From the NCBI RefSeq assembly GCF_021869535.1, contig NW_026262679.1:27962001-28026000 (forward strand): a stretch of 64,000 bases of DNA, in the 5' to 3' direction. A program made the position numbers and the translations under genes. The stretch is from Mytilus californianus (Eukaryota). Of the stretch, positions 10,317 to 48,800 are shown piece by piece; the stretch's first letter is position 1, and each line of letters begins with the position of its first letter. The notes under the pieces were generated by a model, which searched no databases, had not been told where the DNA came from, and saw nothing but the letters and a program-made list of their open reading frames with translations.

Positions 10317-11080
10317 ATTACTATTCAGTATGGAATATCCTAGGAATTGTTATAAAATATTGTCTGAATGTGTTTTTCGTCACCTTATTCGTATTTTTGT
10401 CAATTCCACCATTCACCGTGTACACACGTGACGATGAGCTAACAAAATAGCCAAGCAACGACACATCATAACGTACCTCAAACGAAAGATTGGAAAAATT
10501 CAAACAATGATGCATTACAACGTTATCAAATAATATAAACCGACAAAAAAACCGAAATCGAACAGATTGACTATATATTTCATCGGCAGTTTAGCAGTGA
10601 TTAGTTGTAACATGTAACCGCTTTTTTCAAATCTGCCAGATACTTTTAATTACGAATGGCATATGTTTAGATCGACAACGTGTGCAACTTCTTGTTTTTT
10701 TTTTCAGAAATGTATCACTCTTATACATTGTAGCCGATGAAATAAAAAAATTATACTTACAAAAACGCATCTTTTTAAGTCACTGAAAATTCGAGAAAAG
10801 ACTGTCTCAAACAACCTCCAATTTTTGAATTATTCAACTGTGTCACTTTCAGAAGTTTGATCCCTCCACTTTTCAGCCCACAGTCTACTTCTACTCAACT
10901 GAATACTGTGCAGACTATTCGACTGTACAACAACAATTCTACGCAGTTGTATAAAATAAGACAATGAGACATTGGTACTCTGGACTTGGGTTAACATATC
11001 ACATAATAACAAATGTCTTATCTGTATTATACCATAAATTAAGCTAATTATTTATTTATTATATGTATTGTTTATTGCAG

Positions 11081-14000
11081 GAAACTTTCAGCTAGCAATT
11101 CTTCATGAACAAAGTGATGTTGCCAACCTAATACAAGCGACTATAGCCAAGTACATAGGACCAATAACCAAGAAATGTATTCAATGGTCTCAATCAAATC
11201 CAGTAGGAATGGACTGGCTGAAGAAAGTTTGGTCTTACATTCAGCAATATGATCTGAATTTCTTTAGTCATCTGAATTTGATACCACATACCAAGACAAA
11301 CGGACTATACAAAATATCTACCGTATTTCTTCTGAAATCAAATGGATCGTTCGATATTCCTTCGGATGTATGTTGCTGTTTGGGATACTTAGATATTGTT
11401 GTTCTTGATTTTATACCTTCTGAAATTGAAAATCACATAAGCATTCGCAATTTTATTTATTTGCCGACAGTGGAAAATGTCTTCCAGATGTTAACAAAAG
11501 TGCAAGCGAATGGTAATGTTTACCAATTCATTCAAAAGTTCAATGAAGCAGTCACAAACTCTCAAAGATCGCAGTTTGTAACATATATTTCACGATATTC
11601 TAACATGAACAGACATTTAATTAGTCTTCTTTCTTCTTTGGCACTGTTTGTTGAGAAGACATCACGACGATTTGTGTCGTTGAATCAAGTCAGATCTATT
11701 GCTGACACTGACGGTCTTCCCTTGAGGTACTTTCGGGAAACCTTAGATTGTTCTGACACAAAATACAGATCGCTAGCACAATTGCTGAATGCTACATTCA
11801 TCGACAGAGAGGATGTTATTATTGACATTTTGCAAAATCTGAGTAGCCAATATTCTGAGAGTGATACGAACAAAATGATGGCATATGTCCTGAAAAATAT
11901 TTCATATTACCGAAAGAGCGAACAATTGTTAAGTCTTGCTAAAGGCATCCCGTTTGTATACAGCAATGATGGACAGAGAAAACGAGTAGCAGAATTGTTT
12001 GATCCAGAAGATCCTATTTTACCACTGATAATTTTGGATGGGAACAGATTTCCGAAGAAACAAAGTTTGATTGTTGAACTAAAAATACTGAGAAAACTAG
12101 GTTTAAAGACGGTTAATGATGTTACTCCACAAGATGTACTGTGTTGTGCACAACACATTCATAGTAACTCACACAAAAACACAGAGAAAGAACGCTCAGA
12201 AAAATTGTTCGAATTTTTACAGAGATTTAGTGGACTGCTGAATAATAACATATCTGGATATAAGCTATCGCATCATCTTTCAAACCTACGTTTTGTCGAG
12301 CCTAGCCAGCGGAGAAGAGAATTCCCCTTGTCTCTGCCATGGTATACAGAAACGTCAGAGAGTACTTTTTGTCGACCTTGCGATTTTCTTGACGCAAAAC
12401 ATACAAAATTAGTAGGAAGTGTTAGGCCAGTTTTGAATCGTGACTTTTCAACTAATTTGGCCTTATGTTTTGGTTGGACAGTAGAACCCACTGTGTCCAA
12501 TGTAGTAAACCAGCTACTTATTATTACTGAGAAATATAAGGACCAGAACAAACCTGAACTGTTACCTATCATTAATGACATCTACAGATTTTTGGCATCA
12601 CACTATGATGGAAGTAATATCTTTCAGAATTTATGCACCCAAAAATGGATTTGGATAGGCAATGGGTTTAAAGCACACAACCGTGTTTATTTGAAAACTA
12701 AACCATCTGATATCAACCTCACTCCGTATTTGTACCCCCTGCCTGTTGAATTAAAAGATTCAATTTTGTTACAGTTCTTCAGGAAAATGAATTGTATTGA
12801 AGAGCAAGACACCATATTATTGATCAGAGTTCAATCAATGATCCGGGACAATTACAAGAGCAACACTAAAACAATTGAGAGGGTAAAAACAGATCTTCAG
12901 CTCGTTGTAAACATTTTGAACATTGTTAAAGATGCTCCGAACGATCAGGTCGATGGTGTATTGTTTCCGATCCATCAACAAGATAAATTGAAGGTTGTAT
13001 TGAAACCTCCTAACGAATGCAATTATTCTAAAGATGATGATGACATATTTGGAGATGAAAAACACTTTGTGCATCAAGATGTACCAGTTGACACTGCTGA
13101 AAAATTGGGTGTTCAATCGGTGACGGACACATTGCTGGAAGATGCGGAACTTCTTGAAGAATGGGGACAAAGTGAACCTCTGACTAGAAGAATAAAAAAT
13201 CTACTCGAAGCGTACAAAGATGGACTTTCAGTACCAAAAGAAATTATTCAAAATGCTGACGATGCTGGAGCTACAAAGGTTTGCTTTATGTACGACCAAA
13301 GGGATCGTGAAAAATACGGGAAGATGTTACTCGACAAAAATATGTTTGAATGTCAGGGACCAGCACTTTGGGCGTACAACAACGCAACATTTTCAGATGA
13401 AGACTTAAAGAGTATAACGAAAGTAAGTGGTGCAACCAAAGAAACAGACACAACTAAAATCGGAAAATTTGGTCTTGGATTTTGCTCAGTCTACAACCTG
13501 ACAGAAGTTCCAAGTTTTGTAACAGGGGACCAAATGGTGATATTTGATCCTCACTATGATTATCTTGGAGATGCACTCAAACGTAAAAAACAACCCGGTT
13601 TGAAAATTGATTTGCGGAAAAATAGAAAAATATTAGAAAGAAAAAGATCGCAGTTCGAGCCATATAATGGCGTTTTTGGATGTAATCTTAATGTTCAGCA
13701 AGATAATGTATGTTATAATGGAACTTTGTTTCGGTTGCCACTAAGAACTAGACAGCAAGCATCATCAAGCGAAATAAGTGACAAACCATACAACAATCAG
13801 CAGATGATAAGTCTGATGAGAATATTTGCCGAGGCCGGAGGAAATCTCTTGTTATTCACACAAAATGTTGCCACCGTCGAGTTTTATCATCTACCGGAAA
13901 ATGAAACGGATCCTCAAAATGCTTCTCTTCTATATAGTCTACAAAGACAGACTTTGCAGTTAATTGAAAGACCCATGTATATGGCCTCTGCAGAAAGCAG

Positions 14001-17000
14001 GAAATCAGTTCTTCAGGAACTCTCAACAAGTATTGAAGACGTTAGAAAAGACCCAAATAAACACCTGTCTCCAGTTGAACTAAGTATTTTACTTCAAATT
14101 TCAGTCAAAGCAACAGGCGGACTAGCTCATATTGGGATAAACGGGAGTTCTTCATCAACGAAATGGTTTGTTACATGGGCAACTGGTACAGATAGAAGCA
14201 AGACTCTTGCAATGGATTCAGCTGTTAAGGGTTTACTGCCTCTAGGTAGTGTGGCTTGTCCGTTAGAAAACATACATGGGGACACGTACAGGACTTGCCA
14301 ATTGAATGAATTACCTTTCGGGTTTTACAAAACCAGTCATGTCTTCTGTTACCTCCCACTGCCTGTTGAAACAAAATTTCCAGTTCACATCAATGGCTCT
14401 TTTGCTGTAACATCTGATCGCAGACGACTCTCATGTAAAACAACAGATGATAAGGATTCATTTCAGAGCGACTGGAATGAAGCTTTGATGACGGATGCCG
14501 TTTGTAATGCTTATATACTGTTCCTTAAAAATCTTCGTCACCTAAACATTGAAACGAAAGAACAGTTTCACAAACAATGGCCTGTACAGTATAAGAAAGA
14601 GGAAAACCAGAGCAACTTTGGTAAATTGCAAGTTTCATTTTATCAGAAAATAGCAAATGAAAAGAAAGGTATTGAAGTATTTAGGAGAGAAGAAAACTTT
14701 ACCTCTATTGACCATTGTAAGTTTCTTGACCCCAAGATACTGGAAACAGAATTTGGTGACAAGGCATTTTCTGTTTGTATTCAACTTCTTGAAAACGATA
14801 AAACTACAATGATGCAATTACCAAGCAGATTAAGTTCATGTTTTAAAGATGCAGGATGTGAGTCAATAATAGAATCAAGAATAATAAATATCATTACGTT
14901 TTATTCAGAATTAGTTTTGCCACATCTTTCTTCAAATGAAATTTGGGATGAACAAATCAAAGACCAGCTCATGCTTCATGCATTGGACAATGCATCTGAT
15001 AAGATACTTTCGCTTTTGCAGAACCATGAATCTATACCGACAGCTCCAAATAGACTCTTTAGACGTCCTAGTGAAATAGTTAACAAAACAGGACCTCTGA
15101 ATGTTCTCTTTTGTGATGAAGACCAACGGTTTGTGGTTGGGACAGAGTACACTACATCAAAAAGATTGAATACTCTAAAAAATCTCGGAATGATAACAGA
15201 CCAACTTTCAGAGGATCTGATTGAAGATAGAGCAGTTTCAATACAATCTCTGGCTACAGTCTGCTCTCAATGTGCACTAGATCGCTGTGCACAATTTGTA
15301 AAATATCTAAATACGATGCACACGAGTATCATTAAAAACCAACGACTGTTGAATAAATTGCAGTCAATTAAGTTTTTGCCAATAAAATCTAAACCCAATG
15401 ACTGGAAATGGACTTGGGCTGCGGATACAGTTGCACACCCTGGAGATAAATGTGAGCATTATACATGTGGGAATGAAAACCATAGGAAAGATACCTCTGT
15501 AGTTTTTGAACGCCCAATTGAAATTTATTCTGCAACATTGAATGATATTGTAGGATGCATATTTCCAGTTTTGGATGAAAGTTACTTTTCACGTGACAGC
15601 TACCATGAACTTTTTACACAGCTTGGTGTAAATAACGCAGTTGATCTTGGACAAGCATTAAACAATCTATCCACTCTTAGCAATGCTGTTTGTCAAAATG
15701 GAATTGGTGATGGAACACATATGTTGAACAACACAACATTGAGTGTATATAGATATATCAATGATATTTCCATACACAACTTACACTTAGAAGAGAAGGC
15801 TAGTTTTTTATATGAAACAGCAGAGTGTTATATGGACAAAAAAATTCTACTTCTTGATGGTAGTTTTGTAAAACCTAACAATGTTTTTTTGGATATGTCT
15901 GAAGACTGTATCCCTTACCTGTATAGTCTTAAAAGGGCAGACCATATCAGAAAATTAAAAGGATTTGTAGATCTCTTTAGAATTGAAAAGCAATGTCCTG
16001 CTCGACGGGTAATAAATGAATTACTATCATATCAGTCTAAACATGGATCAGATGCAATGAACGAGAGTGAAGTGAGACTTTATGTTAGACTTTTGAAGGT
16101 TTTAGTTGATTCACTAAACAGCGATGTAATAGATAATGATACTCTTAGGGAGCTATATATTCCAGATGCTGATGGAGTTCTGAGCCCTATTCATACGTTA
16201 TGTCTTGACAGCATCGATATAAAGTCCACAGATACAATGAGATTCACACATCAAAGTATCTCCCCAGAAATTGCAGTGCCATTAGGAATCAATACTAAAA
16301 GACAAAAAAAGGTAGCCGACTGCTCTAGACCATCAAAAATTTATTCAAAAGACTTTGGTCAGCACGAGGAACTTATCACAAGGATAAACCGTATACTCTC
16401 GGGCTATCCTTGTGACTCTGGTGTACTGAAAGAAATGGTGCAAAATGCAGATGACGCTAAGGCTACAGAAGTGCATATTGTCATGGACTTTGCTATGCAT
16501 CCAACAGACAACTTACTTTCCGAAACATGGAAGCCTTTGCAGGGACCTGCTGTTCTTGTATGTAATGACAGTTATTTTTCTGAGTCTGATATAGAAGGAA
16601 TCCAAAGGCTTGGAATAGGCAGCAAAAGTGGAGATCCAACAAAGACTGGACAGTATGGAGTTGGATTCAATGCTGTGTACCATCTGACAGACGTTCCCTC
16701 ATTTCTGACAAGAGGTCCAGAAGTTCAAACTGGAGAAGTTCTTTGTGTAATGGATCCACATTGCAGATATGTTCCAGATGCAACGATTCAATGTCCAGGT
16801 AGAGAATATATAAATACTGAAGTATTAAAAGAAGAACATCCTAATGTTTTTAGCTGTTATCATGATCAAATTCTACTAAAAGAAACTGGAACAATTTTCA
16901 GGCTCCCAATAAGAACATCTCAGTTTAAATCAGATATTTCTGGATCACACTTAACCATAGAAGATGTTAGAGAGCTTGTTAATGGCTTCAAAGACGAAAT

Positions 17001-20000
17001 GGGAGAAATGCTGCTGTTTGTCAACCATGTAAAATCTATAAAGGTTTCAGAAATAATAGAAGGAAAGTTACAACCTGTATACTGTGTTCATTTGGAAATG
17101 TCCGACACAGATGCAGAAATGAGACAAAAGTTTTATAACATGATAGACAGTGGATCTAAAAGCATTCGGGATTGTCAAGAACCAGACTCCATCGATCCAA
17201 ATGAAGTTAAATATTTTGCCGACATCAGAGATTGTAATGGTGCATATTCAAAATGGTTAATAGTTCGTCGAATGGGTTTTTCAGGAAAACATAAAATACC
17301 AGAAGAAGTTATCGGTTCCTACAGAAATGGAAATCTTGGCCTTCTACCAAGAGGAGGTATAGCTTTGTCACTTGATGAAGGGAAGAACGAAAAGGAAAAC
17401 GGCAAGGCGTTCTGTTTTCTGCCACTTCCAGTTGAAACTGGACTACCCGTTCACGTGAATGGACATTTCGCATTAGATCACGAGGCAAGACGAAACTTGT
17501 GGACAGATGATAAAGAAGGATATCGATTATCTTGGAACAAATATTTAATGGAAGACGTCATTGTTCCATCTTATGTAAGTGCCTTACATATATGGAAGAA
17601 AAAATACAGCATCGATACTGGTACACCAACAAATGCACAAAATATGAAGAAAACGCTTATAGAATACCACAGACTTTTTCCAGACACATCAAAGATTACA
17701 GGCATTTTCAAGTTCCTGGCGCAAAGTTTATACAGATGGATTTATAATTATGAAGAACATATGTTTCCAGTATGTAAACTTGTTACAAAAACTGACGTAA
17801 TAACAACCTTTTACCCAGTTGTAAGTGATGTCTTTCATTTTCCTTGTGTATTCAACACATTAAAAACAAAAAACATAACAATAACAACCGACTTCAAGAC
17901 TGTTTCACACACTAGCAAAAGAATAAATGAGCGTGTTTCAAGTTTGGAGCATTCAGGGGCATCACTTGAAAGCAGAGCTGTTCAAAGGCTATCACAGTTC
18001 ATACAAATATGCAAAGATATAGGAATCAAATTGCTGGAATGCCCAAAACATATTTTAAAAAGTATGAAGGATGCTGATCTTAAAGTTGAAGAGATGACCC
18101 CAGTATTGTTCATTTCCTTTCTTAAGTCACATGAAGAAGAACATGAAGATAGTTGTAAGATTGGTAAAATGGGACAGTCACTGGAAGAAACTGCTTTAAG
18201 GAAAATACAGAATCTTGAAATTTGTATAGAGTATTGTAAAAAGGTGACAAACGCAAATTTTGGTGACCTAATGGAAGGATTACCTTTGAATCTGACAAAT
18301 GATGGTGCCTTACGCTCATTCAGTACGTCGCATCCAGTATTTTGCTCAATATACTGTAGTCTCCTGCCCCATACATCGAATTTGTTTTTGCACTGCAATT
18401 TAGTTGATAATTTCAGCCCATCTGATAAAGGATTGAAGGCATTTGATATCGAAGGCTTTGTTGAACACCTCCCAGAAACTTTACATTTAGAGAAATACCG
18501 AACGAAGAATATACCAGTAGAATGGAATCCACAAAGTTCTAATATTCCAGAATCAGATTGGATTGAGAAAACATGGAAATTTCTTAGTTCTGTCGTACGT
18601 AATACACAACAGATGACAGATAACACCGAATCAAACACCAATGCTGAAGTTAACACATCAGAATCTATTTTAAAGATTCTCAACCAACTCCTGTATTGGA
18701 GTTTGGTTCCGTCAGTTCAAGTGAAAACATGTTTAGTTGAACAAGAAAATGAAACAAAAACGCATCTTTTAATGCCTGTGGGTGAAGCTATGTTTATACT
18801 GGACATAAGTACGTTTTCGGGAAAGCTCAAAAGGGCTTTAGAGGAATTAAGGATGCCCTTTCTAGACGAAAATATATACTTTGAGTACGACAACATTGTA
18901 AAGCATTTGGTCGTTGTAAGAGATCGTCCAATCTCTTTGCTCAATCTATTATTTGAAAAGCGACATACTATTGCAAGTCTACAAATTGAACCGACAGATT
19001 GTATAGAAATAATGGACTTTCTATCTGACCATTTAGACATTATGCTAAAAAATGATTCGGAAAAAGATATTTTGGAAAAAATAAAAGAAATACCGCTCCA
19101 TGTCAGCATTACAGGACAACATTGTAACATAAAAAGTGGTCAAAGCGTTCTGGTAATAAATGATATAGTTATAACTGATGGAATCGAAGAATGGGCTGAA
19201 GCATCATATACCTTACTTCTGCAGACAAGTACAAAACTCACTAAGCTATACGAAACATTAGGTTTTACAGATAAAAACCTGAAAAATATTGATCTCTACC
19301 GAAAGCACTTACTGCCAAAATTTGTCGCTTTGCCTAGGGAACATCATATGGCGCACATCAAGTACACACGAGATGTTTTGTTAACAAAACCGATTGGCGG
19401 TTCCTTTAATGAAGTGCAAGAAGATCTCATTTCAATACTAGAAAGAGTTCAATTTGTGCCCGATATTGATGGGGATTTGAAAATAGCATCGAAGTTTAGG
19501 GATCCAACAAATGAGCTTATGCGACTTATGCTTTCAGACTCGGAATTCCCAGCAACAGAATATAAGGATAGCGAATGGATTTTTTTCTTGAAGATAATCG
19601 GCTTACAAACTGAAATTACACCAGAAATGGTCTTACAATTTGCAAATGATATTGAGCAAATTGGACGGAATGGTATAACAAAAGAAAATGAAAAGGATTT
19701 GACATCAAAATCCAAGTTGTTAGTGGAGCATATCTTTACTCGACTAGAAGTAGATACAAACATGCTGAGATCATTAAATACCATAAAATTTATTCCTATA
19801 CACACTATTTGTAATTGGAAATCACGTATATGCTCACAGGCTAATGAAGCAGAATTGATCAGTTTTCATAATGCGACTCTCAGTTATAAGCAAGATATTT
19901 GTTGGACAAGATGTTCGTTAATTCCAGAATGGGCAAATCCATTAAATCCATTAAACCAGCATTATTATGTCGGAATGAAAAAGTATGACGAAATGTTCAA

Positions 20001-22161
20001 ACATTTAGAAATAGTCGAAGAACCAGAATTTAGAGATGTTGTTTGTCATGTGCAGAACATATGTGACAATATGAATGCACTCATTCCCACAATCCAGGAG
20101 GATGAACGTCTTTCCTCAAGAATAGAAAAGTTAATGATTGGTATTTATAAATGGTTACATGGTAAAATGAATGATGGGTCAAACAAGGATAGCATGAAAA
20201 GGACACTTTATGCAAAACCTATTATTTTTTTGCCGGTATATAAATTATTTGTCTCATGCAATAAAGTTGCCATACACATAAAGGAGGAAGATGTTATAAA
20301 GCCATATCTTGTGGAGGCTCCGAGTAAATACGCCTCTTTTTACAATTTATTTGAATGCCTTGGTATGCAAAGACACATAAATGTTTGTAGTTTTGTTCAT
20401 GTGTTAAACCAACTGAAAACGAATATTGGAGACAGAACGGAGCTATTCGCAGAAGAAATGCAAATTGTAAAGCAAGCGGTTCAAAAAATGTTCGACTATT
20501 TACGACTTCCATTATTTGGTGACACTGAATATAAACAGCTTTCAGAATTAAAAACGCTTACTATGCTGTCAAGAGAACTCAATCTATGTGATTCAAAGCT
20601 TCTAGTATATTCTGACAATGAAGCTTTTGAGGAGAAAATAGGAGGTGACATGACAATGTCATATCTCGTAAGACTTGACGAACTTGGAGTAGGGATTACT
20701 GGTTCATTTTCACGAGAATTTCAAAAATTGCCAAAACATTTACAACCAAACATTTTGTCAAACATGATAAAAAAAAGATTGAAAGACAGTTTTGAATTAG
20801 TTCCGATAGATGAAAAAGGACAGTTAATTGCTACTTTGCTAAGTTCCTCGCAGTTCCATAAAGCAGTATTCCGTATTGCTATGCACGCAAGAAAACGAAT
20901 TGAATGGTTAACTGCGTTGGATCTGAATGAAAACATTGTAAATAAGTGGATTGAAAACCTAGAGAAAATACAGGTATTACAAGTCCGAACAATCGAATTT
21001 GATTTAAAGTTTAGAGACCAGAAGGTAGGATCGAAAGAGGTTACTTGTTATTACCAAAAGAAAGACGACTCTCCCAGTATTTTGTATTGTGCCCTAAAGG
21101 CTACAGAACTGAAGGAATGGGTGGTCGAGAATAGTGGTGTTTTTGATTATGCAATTTCCCATTGTTGCGACAGGAAATTTTTCGACGTTGGAGGCTTGCT
21201 TGTAAAAACTCTACTAAAGATCGACAAATTAGAAGACATGTCAATATTGTTAGATAATGAAAATGTTGAAGAATTTTCTATTTCAATCAGATGCCAATCT
21301 TCTTTGTTTCCACCTACTGGTACAACCGTGCATCAAAATTGGCATAGGTTTTTAGACAACAGTTTTACAGAGTTTCACGAGGGTGAATATGTAGCTGTTC
21401 TTTTGAGTGAGGAACAGAATGAAGGCGATATGTACATCCCAGCAGTCTATATTTATGCCAAGATCTTACAGAAATGCGACCCTATCCAAAATACATTATC
21501 TATTATCAGAAGTACGTTGCTAAAGTACAAGGTGCTTGTAGGGCGTGGTCGTATTCAGGAAATACATGCATTTGATATATTCAAATTTAATCGGAATAAA
21601 CAAGAAACTACTCAAGAGCTTGTGCCTTTTCTCGATATAGCAGATACTTCTCCTGACGACAGACCTTTGGAAAGCATTTGTCAGGATGTAGAAGCTATTA
21701 TACTTGCAGCATGGACTTTACCAGAAGAAGAAAGACGAAAATTAATCAAACGATTGTACAAAAAATGGCATCCAGATAAAAATCATGGAAATGAATTTGC
21801 GTCAACAGAAGTATTCAAGTTTATCAAACAAGCTGTTTTGAATTTAGAAAGGGGGCACGGCATCAGAGATAACAATACAGAGGACTTTGATTTTTCTAGG
21901 AATTCAGCATTTTGGTCCCACTTTCAGACATGGGACCATGATGCAACTAATAATTCTGAAAGACACTCGTCAGAAACCAATGGTGGCGGTGGCGCTCAAG
22001 GACATACGGCTGGTCGGCAAATGCGAGAACCTGTTCCATCATTAGCTGAAGCAAATCAGTGGATGCAACAAGCTAAACGAGACGTTACAGCAGCCAGTAA
22101 TTTTTTTGAAGCAGCGGAAGTAGGACACAATTTCAACTGGATATGTTTTATTTGTTATCAG
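11081..22161 (+). CDS. SACS: Sacsin-like protein, 11,081-bp giant exon (two sacsin repeat regions with GHKL-like ATPase motifs, J-like domain, start of HEPN)
   Basis: Open frame from the ORF track; acceptor ttgcAG at 11079-11080; donor cag|GTAATG at 22162. Repeat at about 13162: WGQSEPLTRRIKNLL...KEIIQNADDAGAT...KIGKFGLGFCSVY. Repeat at about 16354: FGQHEELITRIN...KEMVQNADDAKAT...KTGQYGVGFNAVY. J-like motif KRLYKKWHPDKN (HPD at 21769-21777). HEPN start EANQWMQQAKRD...NWICFICYQ. Confidence 0.93.
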
Positions 22162-23210
22162 GTAATGAAAAGATATGGTTATTAATTTAACAGTTCTTAA
22201 TTTTTGAAATGGTTGTAATTCCCTTTGGATTGAAAACACAGGAGTTATGTTAAGTATGAATAGTTAAATAATATAGCTATGTTTAGCTAGCTATTGCAAA
22301 AAGAATACCTAAGTTTCAATAAAGATTAAAGAAATTTATACTGTGATACAATAAATCTCTCTGCAATGCAGTAAAATTTCAGAAGGACCTAAACCTATTT
22401 AGAAAACATGTAATTATTTTTACCAGTATATCGCTTCTTTTTCTTCTACATTTTCCTTTGAATGTTTTTTGACAAGTACCGATTATGAGGGTTTTTACAT
22501 TTTGATACTGTAACGTGAGGGTACCCAAATTGCACCTATTTTGACAGTTTTTTCGCCTACGTTTATTTATGATCCAAACAAAAGTTTCCATTTTGTGTTT
22601 ATTTTGTAGAAGTATCCTTATTTGCTATATAGTCCCACCAATTTAATTTTGAATCCATATTGAATCATAGAAAATGGGTTTGAACCGACCTCCAAACGAC
22701 CCGTGATTCTGTAATGAGGAGTACTCATGCTTAAATTCACGTCCGTGAAAATCGAATAACTGATGTTTTGTTTTATTTCTTCAAATATTTAGAACAATTT
22801 GACAACAGTCCATGCTTAATATTCATATTTTAAGAAACGGATGCCCGTAACATATTTTAATTGCTTATTCTTAGAAGTTGACATTTTGTGGACGTCGTAT
22901 GGCGACGTTTCCGTAGATTTTACTTTTTGGAGAAAATAAGTACTTCACCTGTTGATATGTACCGTGAACGTTTTGTATATATATTTAGCTATGTTGAAAG
23001 ACGTGCATAATGTCAAATAATAAAAAAAAAACTAATTTTTAATTCTCTAAGAAAACTTGTAAGACTTCCGCTGCTATTTTAGCTAAATGGGTGCAATTTG
23101 GGTATTCGGTGCAATTTGGGTACAGTGACGTTAAATATCTGAATGGTCTTGTGTGTTTTTTTCATGATGGAAACAGCATTTGTCTTTTGTTCACCGTCAA
23201 ATCAGAAGAA

Positions 23211-30075: not shown

Positions 30076-30929
30076 AAACATGTTTGATATTGGTTCATTA
30101 TCTACTGCAAGCATAAATGGGATTTTTTTCAAACTGAACCACGTTTAATTAATTCATTTTTTGACAAATATTTAAATATTCGATAGGGACAATTTAAATG
30201 TGAAGATAACATCATTAATGTTTTAAAGTTGCTACAATAAAATTATATAAGGACGCTTCCTTATACAGCGGTACAAACCAAACATCATTAACAAAATCGA
30301 AAAAAGGAAAATAGCATTTCAATGAGCTACGCTTTTCGTGTAAAAAAGGAACCACAATTATGAATTAACATGTAAAAGAAGTCTGTAATAATCAAGAAGA
30401 TTTACTAGGCTGTGCAAAGCGGGAGTGGTTACAGGGGCAATTCATAACACTTGGCATTAATGTCATTCTGTACTGAGTATCTTGCGATTAAGTATACAAC
30501 GTAAACCATCTCTAAAAAACACAATTACTTCATAAGTCAAGTCAAAACTTCTAGTATTGATAGGAAGATTGAAAAAATATAGTCTAAATTGAAAACAACG
30601 TTCAAACCTATGATTGAGTTGGATAAAAACCGCAATTTTTATACGTGTGCATGCAAAACAAATTTCTTGTTAGAGGGGTCTAAAAACAGCACAAACAACA
30701 TTTTCCAAAAGACCAAAAAAGTGAAAAAGTATATTTTAACAAAACCTATTTGACTAACAGGTCGAACAACAAATGTTCTTAAACCCTGCTGACTGCCATT
30801 GGCGATTGCCAAATAAACGGATCAACGATGTAATAAATGGATCTTAATTATAAATCTAATACTAAACAGAAAACAATAAACTTGCGGAAAAGATGGTATA
30901 CCGCAAACAAAAGGTGCAAAGGTTTTTGT

Positions 30930-30973
30930 ACACCATATCCGGATTTCGACAATTAATGTCTCTTCAGTGATGT
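30930..30973 (-). ncRNA. Type I hammerhead ribozyme, copy 1 (intact)
   Basis: Minus strand reads acauca-CUGAAGA-gaca(uuaau)uguc-GAAA-uccggaUA/uggugu. Stem I is 6 bp (one G-U), stem II is 4 bp, stem III is the palindrome AUCCGGAU, the cleavage triplet is AUA, and the predicted cut is between 30936 and 30935. Confidence 0.85.
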
Positions 30974-31473
30974 TAGGAATCGAAACGGTATTTGGAAAGC
31001 CATACAATTTACCTCAATTTAGGATAGACTCTTGAATTTTGAGGAGTCAAAATAGGATGAACGGATCATATAAACCCGAAGGCAAATATAATACAAGCCC
31101 AAACGAAAAAATATAAACAAGTCTAAATTGAAAACAACGTTCAAACCTAAAGTATGATTGCGTTGGATAAAAACCGCAATTTTTATACGTGTGCATGCAA
31201 AACAAATTTCTTGTTAGAGGGGTCTAAAAACAGCACAAACAACATTTTCCAAAAGACCAAAAAAGTGAACAAGTATATTTTAACAAAACGCATTTGACTA
31301 ACAGGTCGAACAACAAATGTTCTTAAACCCTGCTGACTGCCATTGGCGATTGCCAAATAAACGGATCACCGATGTAATAAATGGATCTTAATTATAAATT
31401 TAATACTAAACAGAAAACAATAAACTTGCGGAAAAGATGGTATACCGCAAACAAAAGGTGCAAAGGTTTTTGT

Positions 31474-31517
31474 ACACCATATCCGAATTTCGATAATTAA
31501 TGTCTCTTCAGTGATGT
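31474..31517 (-). ncRNA. Type I hammerhead ribozyme, copy 2 (two stem substitutions)
   Basis: The core is intact, but stem II has a C.A mismatch (gaca/uauc) and stem III reads AUUCGGAU, losing the perfect palindrome. Confidence 0.7.
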
Positions 31518-32017
31518 TAGGAATCGAAACGGTACTTGGAAAGCCATACAATTTACCTCAATTTAGGATAGACTCTTGAATTTTGAGGAGTCAAAATAGG
31601 ATGAACGGATCATATAAACCCGAAGGCAAATATAATACAAGCCCAAACGAAAAAATATAAACAAGTCTAAATTGAAAACAACGTTCAAACATAAAGTATG
31701 ATTGCGTTGGATAAAAACCGCAATTTTTATACGTGTGCATGCAAAACAAATTTCTTGTTAGAGGGGTCTAAAAACAGCACAAACAACATTTTCCAAAAGA
31801 CCAAAAAAGTGAACAAGTATATTTTAACAAAACGCATTTGACTAACAGGTCGAACAACAAATGTTCTTAAACCCTGCTGACTGCCATTGGCGATTGCCAA
31901 ATAAACGGATCACCGATGTAATAAATGGATCTTAATTATAAATTTAATACTAAACAGAAAACAATAAACTTGCGGAAAAGATGGTATACCGCAAACAAAA
32001 GGTGCAAAGGTTTTTGT

Positions 32018-32061
32018 ACACCATATCCGGATTTCGACAATTAATGTCTCTTCAGTGATGT
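32018..32061 (-). ncRNA. Type I hammerhead ribozyme, copy 3 (intact)
   Basis: Identical to copy 1; predicted cut between 32024 and 32023. Confidence 0.85.
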
Positions 32062-32556
32062 TAGGAATCGAAACGGTATTTGGAAAGCCATACAATTTAC
32101 CTCAATTTAGGATAGACTCTTGAATTTTGAGGAGTCAAAATAGGATGAACGGATCATATAAACCCGAAGGCAAATATAATACAAGCCCAAACGAAAAAAT
32201 ATAAACAAGTCTAAATTAAAAACAACTTTCAAACCTATGATTGCGTTGGATACAAACCGCAATTTTTATACGTGTGAATGCAAAACAAATTTCTTGTTAG
32301 AGGGGTCTAAAAACAGCACAAACAACATTTTCCAAAAGAACAAAAAAGTGAAAAAGTATATTTTAACAAAACGCATTTGACTAACAGGTCGAACAACAAA
32401 TGTTCTTAAACCCTGCTGACTGTCATTGGCGATTGCCAAATAAACGGATCACCGATGTAATAAATGGATCTTAATTATAAATTTAATACTAAACAGAAAA
32501 CAATAAACTTGTGGAAAAGATGGTATACCGCAAACAAAAGGTGCAAAGGTTTTTGT

Positions 32557-32600
32557 ACACCATATCCGGATTTCGACAATTAATGTCTCTTCAGTGATGT
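32557..32600 (-). ncRNA. Type I hammerhead ribozyme, copy 4 (intact)
   Basis: Identical to copy 1; predicted cut between 32563 and 32562. Confidence 0.85.
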
Positions 32601-32833
32601 TAGGAATCGAAACGGTATTTGGAAAGCTATATATATATATATATATATATTTCTCAATCTACCTTTATTTTATGGAACTCAAAAACTTACAAAATAGACT
32701 TTAATTGGTTAATTGTAAAAGTTAGATTTTTCTGTAATAATCTCACTTCCTAAAAAAAAAAAATAGAAGAAATAATCAAAGAGCTATTTTTAGTGTCTAG
32801 ATTTTGCTAGTTTTCCTGCTTGAAAGTTTGAGG

Positions 32834-34601: not shown

Positions 34602-35017
34602 TGGTTTATTTAACGTATATACATGTATATGGTTCATGGTTTATATAACGTATATACATGTATATGGTTCATGGTTTATATAACGTATATACATGTATAT
34701 GGTTCATGGTTTATATAACGTATATACATGTATATGGTTCATGGTTTATATAACGTATGTACATGTATATGGTTCATGGTTTATATAACGTATATACATG
34801 TATACGGTTCATGATTTATATAACGTATATACATGTATATGGTTCATGGTGTATATAACGTATATACATGTATATGGTTCATGGTTTATATAACGTATAT
34901 ACATGTATACGGTTCATGGTTTATATAACGTATATACATGTTTATGGTTCATGGTTTATATAACGTATATACATGTATACGGTTCATGGTTTATATACGT
35001 ATACATGTATATGGTTC
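34602..35017. repeat. 35-bp AT-rich minisatellite, about 12 copies (FReD intron)
   Basis: Unit gtatatacatgtatatggttcatggtttatataac; acatgtatat recurs at 34621, 34656 and onward. Confidence 0.95.
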
Positions 35018-35649
35018 AACAGTCTGGAGATATCAAAGGTAGAGGCAAACAAGAGATATAATGGACAATGGCTTAAAATCTAAATCAGATTTAAACAATG
35101 TTTATAGAGGAAATAAATCACATTTTGTTTTTCATTTTTTGTTACAAAAAATTAAACCAACAGAAAAACGAAAAAAAAATAGACTACTGAAAACAAAGAA
35201 TCCCACATACATCTTTGGAATCTAAATACTCTAAAAGAAAAACATAGTAAACCAATGCAAGAAGGCGGTCGTGAATTTTGAATTTAAGTGATGAATAAAA
35301 AAAAAATCTTCAGCGGTTTGAATAACTTCCGTATCGCTGTTTTGTCCAAAGAATGTGTATGTAAGCAACTATAGGTCATCGCAGGATATTAAACAATGAG
35401 CAAAACCCATACCTTATAATCAGCTATAAAAGTCCTCACAATGACCATCGTGAACAAATTCAAACAAGTAAACTAACGGCCTGATTTATAACAAATAAAC
35501 GAAAAACAAAACATGACAGACATCAACAAACAACAACAACTGAATTGCAAGCTCCTCACTTGTGACAGGCACTTAAAGAATATGACTGGTTAAAGCATTC
35601 TTCTTTCTTCTTACTCTGCCTATATTAACATCAGACTGCGTTAACATAC

Positions 35650-43455: not shown

Positions 43456-44539
43456 TTAATCTTTACTAGACACGGTGATTGTATGAAGTGGGATAAAATC
43501 AAAGTTTTGAAATCTTTTAAATATATTCCTATGCAAAAAAAGGTTTTCTTATATGATGTTTTATGCATAAACTGCATTTACCACAGGATTGTCACTGCCT
43601 TTCATTTGACAGTCGACAGCTGTAAGAAGTGCATACATGTATATTATTTGCAACCTAAACCTAAATCTGTAAAATATTTATCTTTGTAATAAAAAACATT
43701 TGATTTACGCATTAATATATAGTGATTTGTGTGACTTAACGTTTGAAATTTAGGTAGGTGGGTGATGCCTCATTACGCAATCACTGAACACATACACGCA
43801 CATACACACACCGTTACTTACAAAATTATCATATAAATTACATGTAATAAACAACCGTGAATTTTACGTTTAAAATTTCAAGTTTTGTACCATTTCCTTA
43901 TGTTCAATCCGTCTCAAAATCTGGTACCTTAATTTCACCTTTTAATAGTGTAAATCCTAACTATTTACTTCACGTTATATATTCGACTGATTCGTTTAAA
44001 GACCGAGAAATTATTACGTTTATTACTAATGTCACTCTGGTCTACAAAAAATGCGTAACAATATCTCCTCCGAAACTTTGTTGCGAAGAGGGTTATAAAA
44101 TGGAGAGACATATAAAAAGACATTCCAAATATAAGATAACTGATCATATAATTGATTAATTAAAAAAAAAGGATTTGGTTGTAAATTGATTTCATTTTTT
44201 TCTTGCAGGTTTATACATTTCAATGTGATTTTTTTTATAAATACATGTTATCAGTATTATAATGAAAGACCCAAGAAGTGAATGAAATGTGTGGAACAGA
44301 TAAGCGGCAGTATTCAACCCACCGTTGTGTCTACCGTTGCTAGATTCCTGTAGTAGCGAGCACATTTTGACCCTGCTTTCAAACTTGCGTGCCTTCTTTT
44401 ATTTCCTTGATCAAGTTAGTGGTCATTCTATTGAAAGCTCCACTTTGAAGGTTAGTTGTTGTGTATTTTTATTTTACGATGGGCAAAGGTAAAGGTTTGT
44501 TCCAACGTTAAACTGGTTTAAACCCACCACATTTTGTGG

Positions 44540-45197
44540 CATACCAAGTCAGGCTCTCTGGACCATGTGTTGTTCATTGATGTTTGTCTTTGGTTGTGAC
44601 ATACCAAGTCAGGCTCTCTGGACCATGTGTTGTTCATTGATGTTTGTCTTTGGTTGTGACATACCAAGTCAGGCTCTCTGGACCATGTGTTGTTCATTGA
44701 TGTTTGTCTTTGGTTGTGACATACCAAGTCTGGCTCTCTGGACCATGTGTTGTTCATTGATGTTTGTCTTTGGTTGTGACATACCAAGTCAGGCTCTCTG
44801 GACCATGTGTTGTTCATTGATGTTTGTCTTTGGTTGTGACATACCAAGTCAGGCTCTCTGGACCATGTGTTGTTCATTGATGTTTGTCTTTGGTTGTGAC
44901 ATACCAAGTCAGGCTCTCTGGACCATGTGTTGTTCATTGATGTTTGTCTTTGGTTGTGACATACCAAGTCAGGCTCTCTGGACCATGTGTTGTTCATTGA
45001 TGTTTGTCTTTGGTTGTGACATACCAAGTCAGGCTCTCTGGACCATGTGTTGTTCATTGATGTTTGTCTTTGGTTGTGACATACCAAGTCAGGCTCTCTG
45101 GACCATGTGTTGTTCATTGATGTTTGTCTTTGGTTGTGACATACCAAGTCAGGCTCTCTGGACCATGTGTTGTTCATTGATGTTTGTCGTTGGTTGT
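44540..45197. repeat. 60-bp tandem repeat, 11 nearly identical copies
   Basis: Unit cataccaagtcaggctctctggaccatgtgttgttcattgatgtttgtctttggttgtga. There is one internal variant (a>t at 44731) and one in the last copy. Confidence 0.97.
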
Positions 45198-45821
45198 TCG
45201 TCTCGTTCTTTTTAAGTGTTTGTAGTTAGTATGATTTGTTGTGCTGTCCAATATTTTTGGTTATTCCTGTTATTTTGTTTATGTATTATTGAATTGGCGA
45301 ACTAAAAGTGTAGCTCAACCTATCATACACATTGGTAGAGTTGACAACGTAAATTAGGTAAATACCAAATTCTTAATTTCTGTCGAGCATACAGTCTGTC
45401 CTTCCTTCTTTTCTTTCGTCTGCATCCTTGCAACGACTGAAATTTGCCATTACAAGTATCCTTCTATTTTTGCAGTAGTACTATGATCATAATATATGTC
45501 CAGGTTAATCTGCATTATGCTGGTACATGTATATGATAGCTACTTGTAAACATGAAAGGACGAATAATTGATAGTTTCATGATGATGATATCACGTTATT
45601 TGGCTTTTTTTAATACAAATTCATTAAATTAGATATTTTACTTTGCTGTTAGATTAGTTTGTCACACGAGCGACAAGAATATTTAACGAAACAAAATGAA
45701 AGATCTGATTTTAATGAGAGTGTGAATATAAGCATAGACAATCAAGAACACATAAAAACCACAAAATATAGTTACATTTCACACTTTTTAAATTTAGGAA
45801 ATGAGTCCCTTGGAATATACA

Positions 45822-48800
45822 ACATTGTGGCCATCGTCATATAGATCGACAAGAGGTACACTGTGACCATCGCCATATAGAATGACATGAGGTACACTGT
45901 GACCAACGTCATATAGATTGACATGAGGTACACTGTGGCCGTCGCCATATAGATTGACATGAGGTACACTGTGACCATCGCCATATAGAATGACATGAGG
46001 TACACTGTGACCAACGTCATATAGATTGGCATGAGGTACACTGTGGCCGTCGCCATAAAGATTGACATGAGGTACACTGTGACCATCGCCATATAGATTG
46101 ACATTAGGTAAACTGTGACCATCGCCATATAGATTGACATAAGGTACACTGTGACCATCGCCATTTGGATTGACATGAGGTACAATATGGTCATCGCCAT
46201 ATAGATTGGCATGAAGTACACTGTAGCTGTCTCCATATAGATTGGCATGAAGTACAATATGAGCATCGCCATAAAGATTGGCATGAGGTACATTGTGGCG
46301 GTCGCCATATAGATTGCCATGAGGTACACTGTAACAATCGCCATATAGATTGACATGAGGTACACTGTGACCGTCGCTTTAAAGATTGGCATGATGTAAA
46401 CTGTGACCATCGTCATATAGATCGATATAAGGTACACTGCGACAATCGCCATATTGATTGACATGAGGTAAACTGTGGCCGTAGCCATTTAGATTGACAT
46501 GAGGTACACTGTGACCATCGCCATATAGAATGACATGTGGTACACTGTGACCAACGTCATATAGATTGGCATGAGGTACACTGTGGCCGTCGCCATAAAG
46601 ATTGACATGAGGTACACTGTGACCATCGCCATATAGATTGACATTAGGTAAACTGTGACCATCGCCATATAGATTGACATAAGGTACACTGTGACCAGCG
46701 CCATATAGAATGACATGAGGTACACTGTGACCAACGTCATATAGATTGACATGAGGTACACTGTGGCCGTCGCCATATAGATTGACATGAGGTACACTGT
46801 GACCATCGCCATATAGAATGACATGAGGTACACTGTAACCAACGTCATATAGATTAGCATGAGGTACACTGTGGCCGTCGCCATATAGATTGACATGAAG
46901 TACACTGTGACCATCGCCATATAGATTGACATTAGGTAAACTATGACCGTCGCCATATAGATTGACATAAGGCACACTACGACCATCGCCATATAGATTG
47001 ACATAAGGTACACTGGGACTATCGCCATATAGATTGACATGAGGTAAACTGTAACCATCGTCATATAGATCAATTTGAGGTACACTGCAACAATCGCCAA
47101 ATAGATTGACATGAAATAAACTGTGGACGTCGTCATTTAGATGACATGAGGTACAATGTGTTCATCGCCATATAGATTGGCATGACGTACACTTTGACCA
47201 TCGCCATATGGATTGGCATGAGGTAAACTGTGGTAGTCGCCATTTAGATTGACATGAGGTACACTGTGACCATCGCCATATAGACTGACATGAGGTACAC
47301 TGTGAGCATCGCCATATAGATTGGCATGATGTAAACAGTGACCATCGTCATATAGATCGATATAAGGTACACTACGACAATCGCCATATTGATTGACATG
47401 AGGTAAACTGTGGCCATCGCCATTTGGATTGACATGAGGTACAATATGGTCATCGCCATATAGATTGGCATGAAGTACACTGTAGCTGTCTCCATATAGA
47501 TTGGCATGAAGTACAATATGAGCATCGCCATAAAGATTGACATGAGGTACACTGCGACCATCGCCATATAGATTGACATAAGGTACACTGTGACTATCGC
47601 CATATAGATTGGCATGAGGTACACTGTGACCATCGCCATAAAGATTGACATGAGGCACACTACGACCATCGCCATATAGATTGACATGAGGTACACTGTG
47701 ACCATCGCCATATAGATTGGCATGAGGTACACTGTGGCCGTCGCCATATAGATTGCCATGAGGTACACTGTAACAATCGCCATATAGATTGACATGAGGT
47801 ACACTGTGACCGTCGCTTTAAAGATTGGCATGAGGTACACTGTGGCCGTCGCCATATAGATTGCCATGAGGTACACTGTAACAATCGCCATATAGATTGA
47901 CATGACGTACACTTTGACCATCGCCATATGGATTGGCATGAGGTAAACTGTGGTAGTCGCCATTTAGATTGACATGAGGTACACTGTGACCATCGCCATA
48001 TAGACTGACATGAGGTACACTGTGAGCATCGCCATATAGATTGGCATGATGTAAACTGTGACCATCGTCATATTGATCGATATAAGGTACACTGCGACAA
48101 TCGCCATATTGATTGACATGAGGTAAACTGTGGCCGTCTCCATTTAGATTGACATGAGATACAATATGGTCATCGCCATATAGATTGGCATAAAGTACAC
48201 TGTAGCCGTCTCCATATAGATTGGCATGAAGTACAATGTGAGCATCGCCATAAAGATTGACATGAGGTACACTGCGACCATCGCCATATAGATTGACATA
48301 AGGTACACTGTGACTATCGCCATATAGATTGACATAAGGTACACTGGGACCATCGCCATATAGATTGACATTAGGTAAACTGTGACCTTCGCCATAGACA
48401 TTGACATGAGGTACACTGTGATCATCGCCATATAGATTGACATCATGTAAACTGTAGCCGTCGCCATTTAGATTGACATGAGGTACAATGTGGTTGGTCA
48501 TCACCAAATAGATTTGCATTAGATTCATTGTGGCCGTCGCCATTTACCTTGAAATTATGTACACTGTGGCCGTCGCCATATAGATTGACATGAGGTAAAC
48601 TGTGGTCGTCGCCATATAGATTGACATGAGGTACACAGTTGCCGTCTATATTTAGATTGACATGAGGTCCAATGTGGTCATTGCCATATAGGTTGGCATG
48701 AGGTATCCTGCGGCCGTCGCCATATAAATTGGCATGAAGTACTGTGTGTTTTGCTATGTGTTTGTTTACTAGTATTCTACATTTGCTAGAGGTATAGGGG

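What the first reader, a model, noticed from the sequence alone, without database searches (positions are those of the whole stretch)
30581..32627. Tandem array of 544-bp units each carrying a type I hammerhead ribozyme: a candidate large retrozyme that makes circular RNA
Seen in the sequence: each of the four units has, on the minus strand, a complete hammerhead (CUGAAGA core, 4-bp stem II, GAAA, palindromic stem III AUCCGGAU, AUA cleavage triplet, 6-bp open stem I). Predicted cuts at 32563/62, 32024/23, 31480/79 and 30936/35 would release monomers of 539, 544 and 544 nt. Established: tandem genomic repeats with type I hammerheads (non-LTR retrozymes, and the pseudo-LTRs of Penelope-like elements) occur in animals including mussel. 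They self-process into linear and circular monomers, and a palindromic stem III is linked to dimeric cleavage. Inference: this is a non-coding, self-cleaving mobile RNA. Its unit is longer than the roughly 170-400 nt monomers I recall for animal retrozymes, so it may be an undescribed family. An ORF-based annotation would miss it entirely.
Basis: partly seen in the sequence, partly recalled or inferred. Interest (0 to 1): 0.92.

Follow-up and report, generated by a model that had tools for sequence, protein, structure and literature searches.

The report
Hammerhead-ribozyme retrozyme array, Penelope-type insertion
This is one copy of a very abundant, non-coding mussel jumping element whose 539-544-base repeats each carry a self-cutting hammerhead RNA motif; its insertion scars point to copying by a Penelope-like retrotransposon enzyme, and it is a new member of a known class, not a new kind of element.

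Summary
The tandem array is real: window 30581-32631, minus strand, units of 539, 544 and 544 nt plus two partial units. It carries four type I hammerhead motifs. Three are intact and one (31474-31517) has two disabling changes. Rfam's Hammerhead_1 aligns full-length but below threshold (22.4 vs 34 bits). The motif has the same architecture as the tested mussel retrozyme Mg353.

The genome holds 9,521 exact copies of the 39-nt motif, against 3,953 for the published type. At least 3,208 arrays end at one unit position (q369) in a (TA)n tract. Their 5' ends are scattered. Inverted truncated copies and a 39-nt "tail" (q331-369) recur. These are the published marks of Penelope-like element insertion.

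Best reading: a non-autonomous, Penelope-dependent non-LTR retrozyme. Circular RNA is not shown. Oligo-dT and cDNA reads cover the unit at background level, with no ends at the cut site, and the monomer does not fold better than shuffles. The unit size is not unprecedented: a 2026 preprint reports 51-972 bp. First readers of this scan flagged what look like the same family (537-541-nt units) in three other windows.

Verdict: new member of a known kind, moderate interest.

The parts
30581..32631 (-). Whole head-to-tail array: 69-nt 5' partial unit, three full units, and a 3' partial unit of about 355 nt
32563..32631 (-). 5'-truncated first unit (unit positions q476-544). The array's 5' boundary is ambiguous within TA microhomology at 32627-32631
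32024..32562 (-). Full unit A, 539 nt (the family's modal length), counted from cut site to cut site
31480..32023 (-). Full unit B, 544 nt (5-nt insertion shared with unit C). B and C are 99.3% identical and 96.9-97.6% identical to A
30936..31479 (-). Full unit C, 544 nt. Used as the coordinate reference: q1 = 31479, q544 = 30936
30581..30935 (-). 3' terminal partial unit (q1 to about q375, with a 5-nt deletion). It ends near the family's fixed terminus q369 but, unlike most copies, is not followed by a (TA)n run
32557..32600 (-). Hammerhead 1, intact; predicted cut 32563/32562
32018..32061 (-). Hammerhead 2, intact; predicted cut 32024/32023. Full-length alignment to Rfam RF00163 at 22.4 bits
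31474..31517 (-). Hammerhead 3, mutated: stem II UGUC>UAUC and stem III AUCCGGAU>AUUCGGAU. Probably inactive
   Evidence: no pattern match here
30930..30973 (-). Hammerhead 4, intact; predicted cut 30936/30935
32628..32652 (.). (AT)12 microsatellite abutting the array's 5' end: the (TA)n target context typical of the family
31111..31149 (-). q331-369 in unit C: the family's 3'-terminal module or 'tail'. Genome-wide, arrays stop at q369, and isolated or inverted 39-nt copies of this piece flank arrays. Inferred to be the reverse-transcription start region

Best explanation
The array is one insertion of a high-copy, non-coding, non-autonomous retroelement of the animal non-LTR retrozyme type, in a mussel-like 1.65-Gb genome. 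Each 539-nt unit encodes on the minus strand a canonical metazoan type I hammerhead. It has a 6-bp open helix I, a 4-bp helix II with a 5-nt loop, and a helix III that is only A-U, U-A plus a CCGG loop in a single copy. Two copies pairing turn helix III into an 8-bp helix.

Inferred life cycle:
1. An array is transcribed as a multimer.
2. Two hammerheads pair through the palindrome (a double hammerhead) and cut after AUA, releasing 539-nt monomers. A host tRNA ligase may circularise them.
3. A Penelope-like element (PLE) RT/GIY-YIG protein supplied in trans nicks a (TA)n tract.
4. It starts reverse transcription inside the RNA at about q369, with a second start near q330.
5. It copies through the hammerhead junction several times on an uncut multimer or a circle.
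6. It stops at a random point.

This yields head-to-tail arrays with a fixed 3' end and variable 5' ends.

Shown here: the motif, its copy number, its conservation, and the insertion architecture. Inferred: cleavage, circularisation, the identity of the RT, and the nature of the template.
For: Motif:
- All core positions are present (CUGANGA, G10.1-C11.1, GAAA, A15.1-U16.1, H17 = A), read directly from the sequence.
- RF00163 aligns full-length.
- Element lengths match the tested mussel retrozyme Mg353 hammerhead GCGUCA-CUGAUGA-GUCUUUUGUAGAC-GAAA-CGCGCG-UC|UGGCGU. Pairs in helices I, II and III differ in a compensatory way, and the palindrome is retained.
- Cofolding two copies returns the double hammerhead as the minimum-energy structure, -26.7 kcal/mol against 2 x -9.1 for separate monomers.

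Selection:
- The hammerhead is invariant across subfamilies whose flanks differ.
- Its divergence is 3.1% against 5.1% elsewhere, rank 7 of 544 windows, in a position-ordered sample.
- It is 1.5% against 2.8% in the first sample.

Mobility:
- 9,521 exact motif copies, 3,208 exact 'q369 + (TA)n' termini and 7,272 internal junctions. That gives about 3 units per array, on many contigs.
- In 50 fetched loci, most 3' ends fall at q367-373 followed by (AT)n.
- 5' ends are scattered over the unit, with only 1 of about 45 at q1.
- 5' flanks often end in (TA)n.
- Adjacent inverted 5'-truncated arrays and isolated 29-40-nt copies of q331-369 recur.

Link to PLEs:
- These are the published PLE signatures: (TA)n bias, tandem/inverted structures and a 30-40-bp tail (PMC8557442).
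- Internal RT initiation at two sites, AT-rich nicking and multimeric RNA as substrate are also published (PMC11167929).
- Retrozymes have been proposed as PLE derivatives (bioRxiv 10.64898/2026.07.22.740005).

Template:
- Several arrays have 99.4-100% identical units. One alternates strictly A-B-A-B. This fits repeated copying of one monomeric or dimeric template.

Partner:
- One locus (L058) fuses retrozyme q343-544 + q1-317 directly to a 5'-truncated PLE (RT C-terminus, CxxC linker, GIY-YIG), as a template switch would.
Against: - Cleavage is untested.
- Rfam scores below its gathering threshold (22.4 vs 34 bits), and the model finds nothing in the larger search.
- Within the family the motif shows no covariation because it does not vary.
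- The 544-nt monomer folds no better than shuffles (z = 0.08), unlike the 'highly self-paired' circles described for other retrozymes. The monomer minimum-energy fold sequesters the core in an alternative helix.
- RNA-seq raw reads (one cDNA and two oligo-dT runs) show both orientations and no pile-up of ends at 30936/35.
- In those reads the ratio of array-end to internal junctions is 27-41%, equal to the genomic ratio of 31%. That is background transcription in proportion to copy number.
- The family makes up about 0.012% of reads, against roughly 0.5% of the genome by my estimate of about 15,000 units.
- No autonomous PLE sharing the unit's sequence was found. No same-strand pairs of this hammerhead about 3-4 kb apart appear among the first 100 listed sites.
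- The window's own 3' end lacks the (TA)n run.
Confidence: 0.8

Rival explanations
1. These are terminal repeats (pLTRs) or solo remnants of an autonomous Penelope-like element, not a separate non-autonomous family. On this reading the array is what is left of PLE tandems after loss of the ORF.
For: PLE pLTRs carry hammerheads and form tandems. Xenopus retrozymes are sister to pLTRs. L058 shows the unit adjoining a PLE fragment.
Against: Thousands of arrays consist of the 539-nt unit alone, with precise unit-to-unit junctions (7,272 exact). No ORF over 61 aa lies in the array. No RT or EN ORF lies within 10 kb in the window. Only one ORF of 180 aa or more turned up in about 250 kb of flanks. 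No hammerhead pairs spaced about 3-4 kb appear among the listed sites. The unit may well descend from a pLTR, but it now amplifies on its own.
Confidence: 0.1
2. This is ordinary satellite or tandem-repeat DNA spread by unequal crossing-over or segmental duplication. On this reading the hammerhead-like motif is a non-functional relic.
For: Some loci are segmental duplicates (L014/L016, L024/L025) or higher-order repeats (L027, 1,710-bp period). RNA levels are at background. The monomer is not specially structured.
Against: At least 3,208 separate termini lie at the same unit position next to (TA)n, with different flanks. 5' truncation is scattered. Tails and inverted partners are present. The hammerhead is the least diverged segment free of sampling bias and keeps every core position in 9,521 exact copies.
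Confidence: 0.05
3. The element is the same, but the template for integration is always the uncut linear multimeric transcript (standard PLE mechanism). On this reading circular RNA plays no part, and the hammerhead is a passenger or a protein-assisted processing signal.
For: For the anole PLE, hammerhead mutants insert normally in vitro, unprocessed RNA is the main substrate, and no reads end at the cut site. Here too, reads cross the cut site with no pile-up of ends. Only 1 of about 45 arrays starts at q1. Heterogeneous arrays (94% intra-array identity) look like copies of heterogeneous parents.
Against: It does not explain why the hammerhead is kept invariant in a non-coding element. Arrays of 8-9 near-identical units and a strict A-B alternation come more easily from a monomeric or dimeric circle. 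The related mussel retrozyme forms abundant circles.
Confidence: 0.35

Closest known systems
Mytilus galloprovincialis non-LTR retrozyme (Mg353; Cervera & de la Pena 2020, PMC7229834)
   Same: The host lineage matches: the published hammerhead 39-mer occurs 3,953 times in this genome. Both are tandem, AT-rich and non-coding units with one type I hammerhead each. The hammerhead architecture is identical: 6-bp helix I with the same U-G wobble position, 4-bp helix II with a 5-nt loop, and a 6-nt palindrome between A15.1 and U16.1.
   Different: The unit is 539-544 nt against 350-390. The hammerhead sequence differs at N7 (A vs U), in all three helices and at the cleavage triplet (AUA vs GUC). Exact motif copies are about 2.4 times more numerous. 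Circular RNA and self-cleavage were shown for Mg353 and are not shown here.
Penelope-like elements and their non-autonomous derivatives (Craig et al. 2021, PMC8557442; Frangieh et al. 2024, PMC11167929; Li et al. 2026 preprint)
   Same: Shared features are (TA)n or AT-rich targets, head-to-tail multicopy insertions, adjacent inverted 5'-truncated copies, a 30-40-bp tail, a 3' end set by internal RT initiation rather than by the RNA end, and a hammerhead in the repeated non-coding part.
   Different: There is no RT/EN ORF. The hammerhead is of the canonical metazoan type (6-bp helix I, 4-bp helix II), not the minimal PLE type (long helix II, short helix I). The RT start lies 369 nt downstream of the cut site, against roughly 90 nt in the anole PLE. 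The autonomous partner was not identified.
Newt/axolotl satellite 2 and Schistosoma Sm-alpha hammerhead repeats
   Same: All are tandem genomic repeats with type I hammerheads whose weak helix III makes them cut as dimers.
   Different: The hosts and sequences differ. Those units are 330-350 nt. Dimer-dependent cleavage was shown experimentally for them. Here it is only predicted.
Plant LTR retrozymes
   Same: Both are non-autonomous and hammerhead-flanked, with a proposed circular RNA intermediate.
   Different: Plant elements have type III hammerheads, real LTRs, PBS/PPT, 4-bp TSDs, high GC and Gypsy-type mobilisation. None of these is present here.

Membership tests
Hammerhead ribozyme, type I | Conserved catalytic core: C3 U4 G5 A6 N7 G8 A9, G12 A13 A14, A15.1-U16.1, H17, with a G10.1-C11.1 pair | tested here: met
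   CUGAAGA / G...C / GAAA / A...U / A is present in three of the four window copies and in 9,521 exact genomic copies.
Hammerhead ribozyme, type I | Three helices in type I topology (helix I open) | tested here: met
   Helix I has 6 bp (ACAUCA/UGGUGU, one G-U). Helix II has 4 bp plus a 5-nt loop. Helix III has 2 bp plus CCGG, or 8 bp in a dimer. The RF00163 structure line aligns end to end. The double hammerhead is the cofold minimum-energy structure.
Hammerhead ribozyme, type I | Score at or above the Rfam RF00163 gathering threshold | tested here: not met
   The score is 22.4 bits against 34. There was no hit in the window-wide or 2.8-kb scans.
Hammerhead ribozyme, type I | Covariation supporting the helices | tested here: inconclusive
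   The motif is invariant within the family. Against the Mg353 hammerhead, pairs differ in a compensatory way and the palindrome is kept. Homology of the two motifs is assumed, not proven.
Hammerhead ribozyme, type I | Site-specific self-cleavage | not testable with these tools
   RNA-seq shows no ends at the predicted site, but the libraries are oligo-dT or cDNA.
Animal non-LTR retrozyme | Tandem repeats (dimers to multimers), each with a type I hammerhead; low GC; no LTR, PBS, PPT or ORF | tested here: met
   (GC 33%, longest ORF 61 aa)
Animal non-LTR retrozyme | Dispersed, multi-locus distribution consistent with retrotransposition | tested here: met
   At least 3,208 termini on many contigs, with a fixed 3' end and variable 5' ends.
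Animal non-LTR retrozyme | [quoted passage not shown] | tested here: inconclusive
   Reads cover the unit and the unit-to-unit joint, but at background level and in genomic proportions. Tandem and circular joints cannot be told apart, and poly(A)-selected libraries would miss circles.
Animal non-LTR retrozyme | Monomer RNA predicted to be highly self-paired | tested here: not met
   MFE is -105.7 kcal/mol against a shuffle mean of -106.2, z = 0.08.
Penelope-like element (autonomous) | ORF with telomerase-like RT and a GIY-YIG endonuclease | tested here: not met
   None lies in or near the array. A PLE fragment adjoins the unit only in L058.
PLE-mobilised non-autonomous element | PLE insertion signatures: microsatellite or AT-rich target, head-to-tail plus inverted copies, 30-40-bp tail, internally defined 3' end | tested here: met
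   compared
PLE-mobilised non-autonomous element | Sequence shared with an autonomous PLE of the same genome (3' end or pLTR) | not tested
The related PLE contigs fetched from other samples show no similarity to the unit.

The most novel reading that the evidence does not exclude
The fixed internal terminus (q369), the routine read-through of the ribozyme junction (only 1 of about 45 arrays starts at the cut site) and the arrays of identical or strictly alternating units could be genomic footprints of rolling-circle reverse transcription. On this reading a Penelope-like RT initiates internally at a 39-nt recognition module and copies 539-nt (or dimeric 1,078-nt) circular RNAs. This family carries the most numerous hammerhead motif I counted in this genome. 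It would then be a natural system for showing directly how retrozymes move.
Probability: 0.3. Interest if true: 0.65.

Novelty: new member of a known kind. Interest (0 to 1): 0.42.

Why it matters
ORF-based annotation misses this element, yet by my estimate it fills about 0.5% of the genome (roughly 15,000 units). It carries more hammerhead copies than the mussel retrozyme that has been studied experimentally. Its thousands of young insertions give an unusually clean record of the integration mechanism: one 3' terminus, (TA)n targets, 39-nt tails and scattered 5' ends. That record ties animal retrozymes to the internal-initiation mechanism recently shown in vitro for a vertebrate Penelope-like element. 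It also offers a concrete RNA module (q331-369) and target ((TA)n) for a reconstitution experiment. It does not change the current picture of retrozymes.

Tried and rejected
- Tandem Repeats Finder did not report the array because the period exceeds 500.
- Rfam at gathering threshold and at E<=10 on 2.8 kb gave no hammerhead. Only the 81-nt search did.
- The recurring '495-544 + unit + 1-55' forms in the first genome search looked like a 105-bp terminal-repeat architecture. They were artefacts of the candidate windows, so that idea was dropped.
- Spacings of about 3.1 kb between junction motifs suggested an autonomous element. The loci (L048/L049, L054/L055) turned out to be separate arrays.
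- The huge summed depth in run X1 looked like massive expression. It is what a whole-genome DNA run would give for a repeat of about 10^4 copies, so it is not counted as expression.
- RNA-seq reads gave no strand, cleavage or circle information.
- Homologues of the L058 endonuclease and three of their contigs come from other organisms and share nothing with the unit.
- Sequence-string and 'Mytilus satellitome' literature searches found no description of this family.
- A direct alignment with the published Mg353 unit was not done. No copy is in the DNA I hold, and I did not type a long sequence.
- A majority-rule unit was computed only as a yardstick for divergence. It is not reproduced here.
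Full report
**Observation.** The window holds a head-to-tail array on the minus strand from about 32631 to 30581. It consists of a 69-nt 5' partial unit, three full units of 539, 544 and 544 nt, and a 3' partial unit of about 355 nt. Tandem Repeats Finder missed it because its longest period is 500.

Each unit boundary carries the string ACAUCA-CUGAAGA-GACAUUAAUUGUC-GAAA-UCCGGA-UA|UGGUGU. It matches a strict pattern three times, where shuffles give none. The copy at 31474-31517 has two substitutions, one in helix II and one in the helix III palindrome. The predicted cut sites and monomer lengths are correct.

**Is it a hammerhead?** Every conserved core position is present. Helix I has 6 bp (one G-U), helix II has 4 bp with a 5-nt loop, and helix III is A-U, U-A with a CCGG loop. 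This matches the 'canonical metazoan type I' description in PMC4209133.

Rfam finds nothing at gathering threshold, or at E<=10 in 2.8 kb. With only 81 nt searched, RF00163 aligns over its whole length and structure at 22.4 bits (gathering 34).

The experimentally active mussel retrozyme Mg353 has a hammerhead with the same element lengths and a different palindrome, ACGCGCGU. Several paired positions differ on both sides.

Cofolding two copies gives the classic double hammerhead as the minimum-energy structure: -26.7 kcal/mol against -9.1 for each monomer, whose own best fold is not the ribozyme. The sequence therefore predicts cutting in multimers and quiescence in monomers. Cleavage itself is untested.

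**What the genome says.** The assembly is 1.65 Gb in 175 contigs. Counts of exact matches, each with zero for the reversed control:

| Pattern | Count |
|---|---|
| 39-nt hammerhead of this family | 9,521 |
| Published Mg353-type 39-mer (up to 1 mismatch) | 3,953 |
| Array 3' end, '...TTCAATTTAGACTTGTWTATAT' running into (AT)n | 3,208 |
| Internal version of that junction | 7,272 |

The last two give about three units per array.

I examined 50 fetched loci: 20 chosen by similarity and 30 taken in positional order. Their features:
- Most 3' ends fall at unit position q367-373, where q1 is the first base after the cut.
- 5' ends are spread over the whole unit. Only one of about 45 lies at q1.
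- 5' flanks often end in (TA)n.
- Inverted 5'-truncated arrays often sit beside the 5' end.
- Isolated 29-40-nt copies of q331-369 occur after the (TA)n or inverted at the 5' end.

An apparent '50 + unit + 55' architecture in the first search was an artefact of candidate windows.

**Link to Penelope-like elements (PLEs).** (TA)n bias, tandem plus inverted structures and a 30-40-bp tail are the published PLE hallmarks (PMC8557442). In vitro work on an anole PLE showed several matching features (PMC11167929):
- nicking of AT-rich DNA;
- reverse transcription starting at two internal sites, with the interval between them being the 'tail';
- multimeric, unprocessed RNA as substrate;
- a hammerhead that is dispensable in vitro.

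A 2026 preprint argues that animal retrozymes are non-autonomous PLE derivatives and reports consensus lengths of 51-972 bp. The present family fits this frame closely, with q369 and about q330 as the inferred start sites.

One locus (L058) joins q343-544 + q1-317 of the unit directly to a 5'-truncated PLE with an RT C-terminus, a CxxC linker and a GIY-YIG domain. That is what a template switch would produce. It is a single case, and the partner remains unidentified.

**Selection on the ribozyme.** Across 215 motif instances the hammerhead is the same in subfamilies whose adjoining sequence differs. Divergence is 1.5% against 2.8% in the first sample. In the positional sample it is 3.1% against 5.1%, ranking 7th of 544 windows. 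The only lower window is the one used to pick that sample. A passenger motif in a non-coding repeat would not be expected to stand out like this.

**Template.** Arrays regularly run through the cut site and almost never start at it. The template is therefore continuous there: either an uncut multimer or a religated circle. Some arrays have 99.4-100% identical units and one alternates A-B-A-B, while others are as diverse as unrelated copies. These data cannot decide between rolling-circle copying and copying of multimeric transcripts.

**RNA evidence.** Raw reads from one cDNA and two oligo-dT runs cover the whole unit in both orientations and include the unit-to-unit joint. No ends pile up at 30936/35. 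Reads that run from q369 into (TA)n make up 27-41% of local depth. The genomic share of termini among junctions is 31%, so these reads reflect transcription in proportion to copy number.

The family is about 0.012% of reads, against roughly 0.5% of the genome by my estimate of about 15,000 units. The 544-nt monomer folds no better than shuffles (z = 0.08). Circular RNA is thus neither shown nor excluded, since these libraries would not capture it.

**Context in the window.** No ORF over 61 aa lies in the array, GC is 33%, and no PLE ORF lies nearby. The 5' end abuts an (AT)12 tract. The 3' end has a 5-nt deletion and no (TA)n run, which is atypical for the family. Units B and C are 99.3% identical and differ by 2.4-3.1% from unit A. 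This suggests a later local duplication.

**Verdict.** This is a real, abundant, hammerhead-bearing non-autonomous retroelement of the animal retrozyme/PLE-dependent kind. I found no description of it in the literature I could search. First readers of this scan flagged what look like the same family (537-541-nt units) in three other windows. It is a new member of a known kind. The length argument for novelty does not hold, and circular RNA remains to be shown.

Noticed in passing
window 11068-22185 (+): An uninterrupted 3,705-aa ORF with two Sacsin domains (E 6e-154), an HATPase_c_3-like stretch and a C-terminal DnaJ-like stretch. This is a sacsin-like gene with a giant single exon, about 8 kb from the array.
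   Followed up: partly
L058 1496-3028 (G000:C1:9617634-9619166): Retrozyme q343-544 + q1-317 is fused in the same orientation to a 5'-truncated Penelope-like element (RT C-terminal motif, CKSCGNRRCLTC linker, GIY-YIG core, one frameshift). It could be a template-switch chimera or a nested insertion. The locus ends before the PLE 3' end.
   Followed up: partly
L018 (G000:C88:73043500-73051800): An array of 8 full units, 99.6-100% identical, alternates strictly between two variants (A-B-A-B...), as if copied from a dimeric template.
   Followed up: partly
L027 (G000:C165:97228500-97238499): A higher-order repeat of about 1,710 bp is built from rearranged unit pieces (q353-544, q1-544, q1-260, q92-357) plus about 460 bp of other sequence. 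It shows secondary amplification of a rearranged copy.
   Followed up: no
window 34602-35018: A 35-bp minisatellite, 12 copies, 95% matches (TGGTTTATATAACGTATATACATGTATATGGTTCA), lies 2 kb from the array.
   Followed up: no
window 44518-48543 (-): A cluster of overlapping 170-240-aa ORFs in several frames has only low-complexity Pfam hits (TAP_C, Tox-GHH, Nbs1_C, with no stretch significant on its own). It is probably a coding-like tandem repeat, not a gene.
   Followed up: partly
own genome: The published Mg353-type retrozyme hammerhead occurs 3,953 times (up to 1 mismatch), mostly as widely spaced single sites on contigs C1 and C2. It is less often in long arrays than the family studied here.
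   Followed up: no
RNA run X22, window position 30966: In organism A, 28% of reads carry U4>C in the hammerhead core (CUGA>CCGA), against almost none in X21 (organism C). This points to a species-specific subfamily with a dead ribozyme.
   Followed up: no
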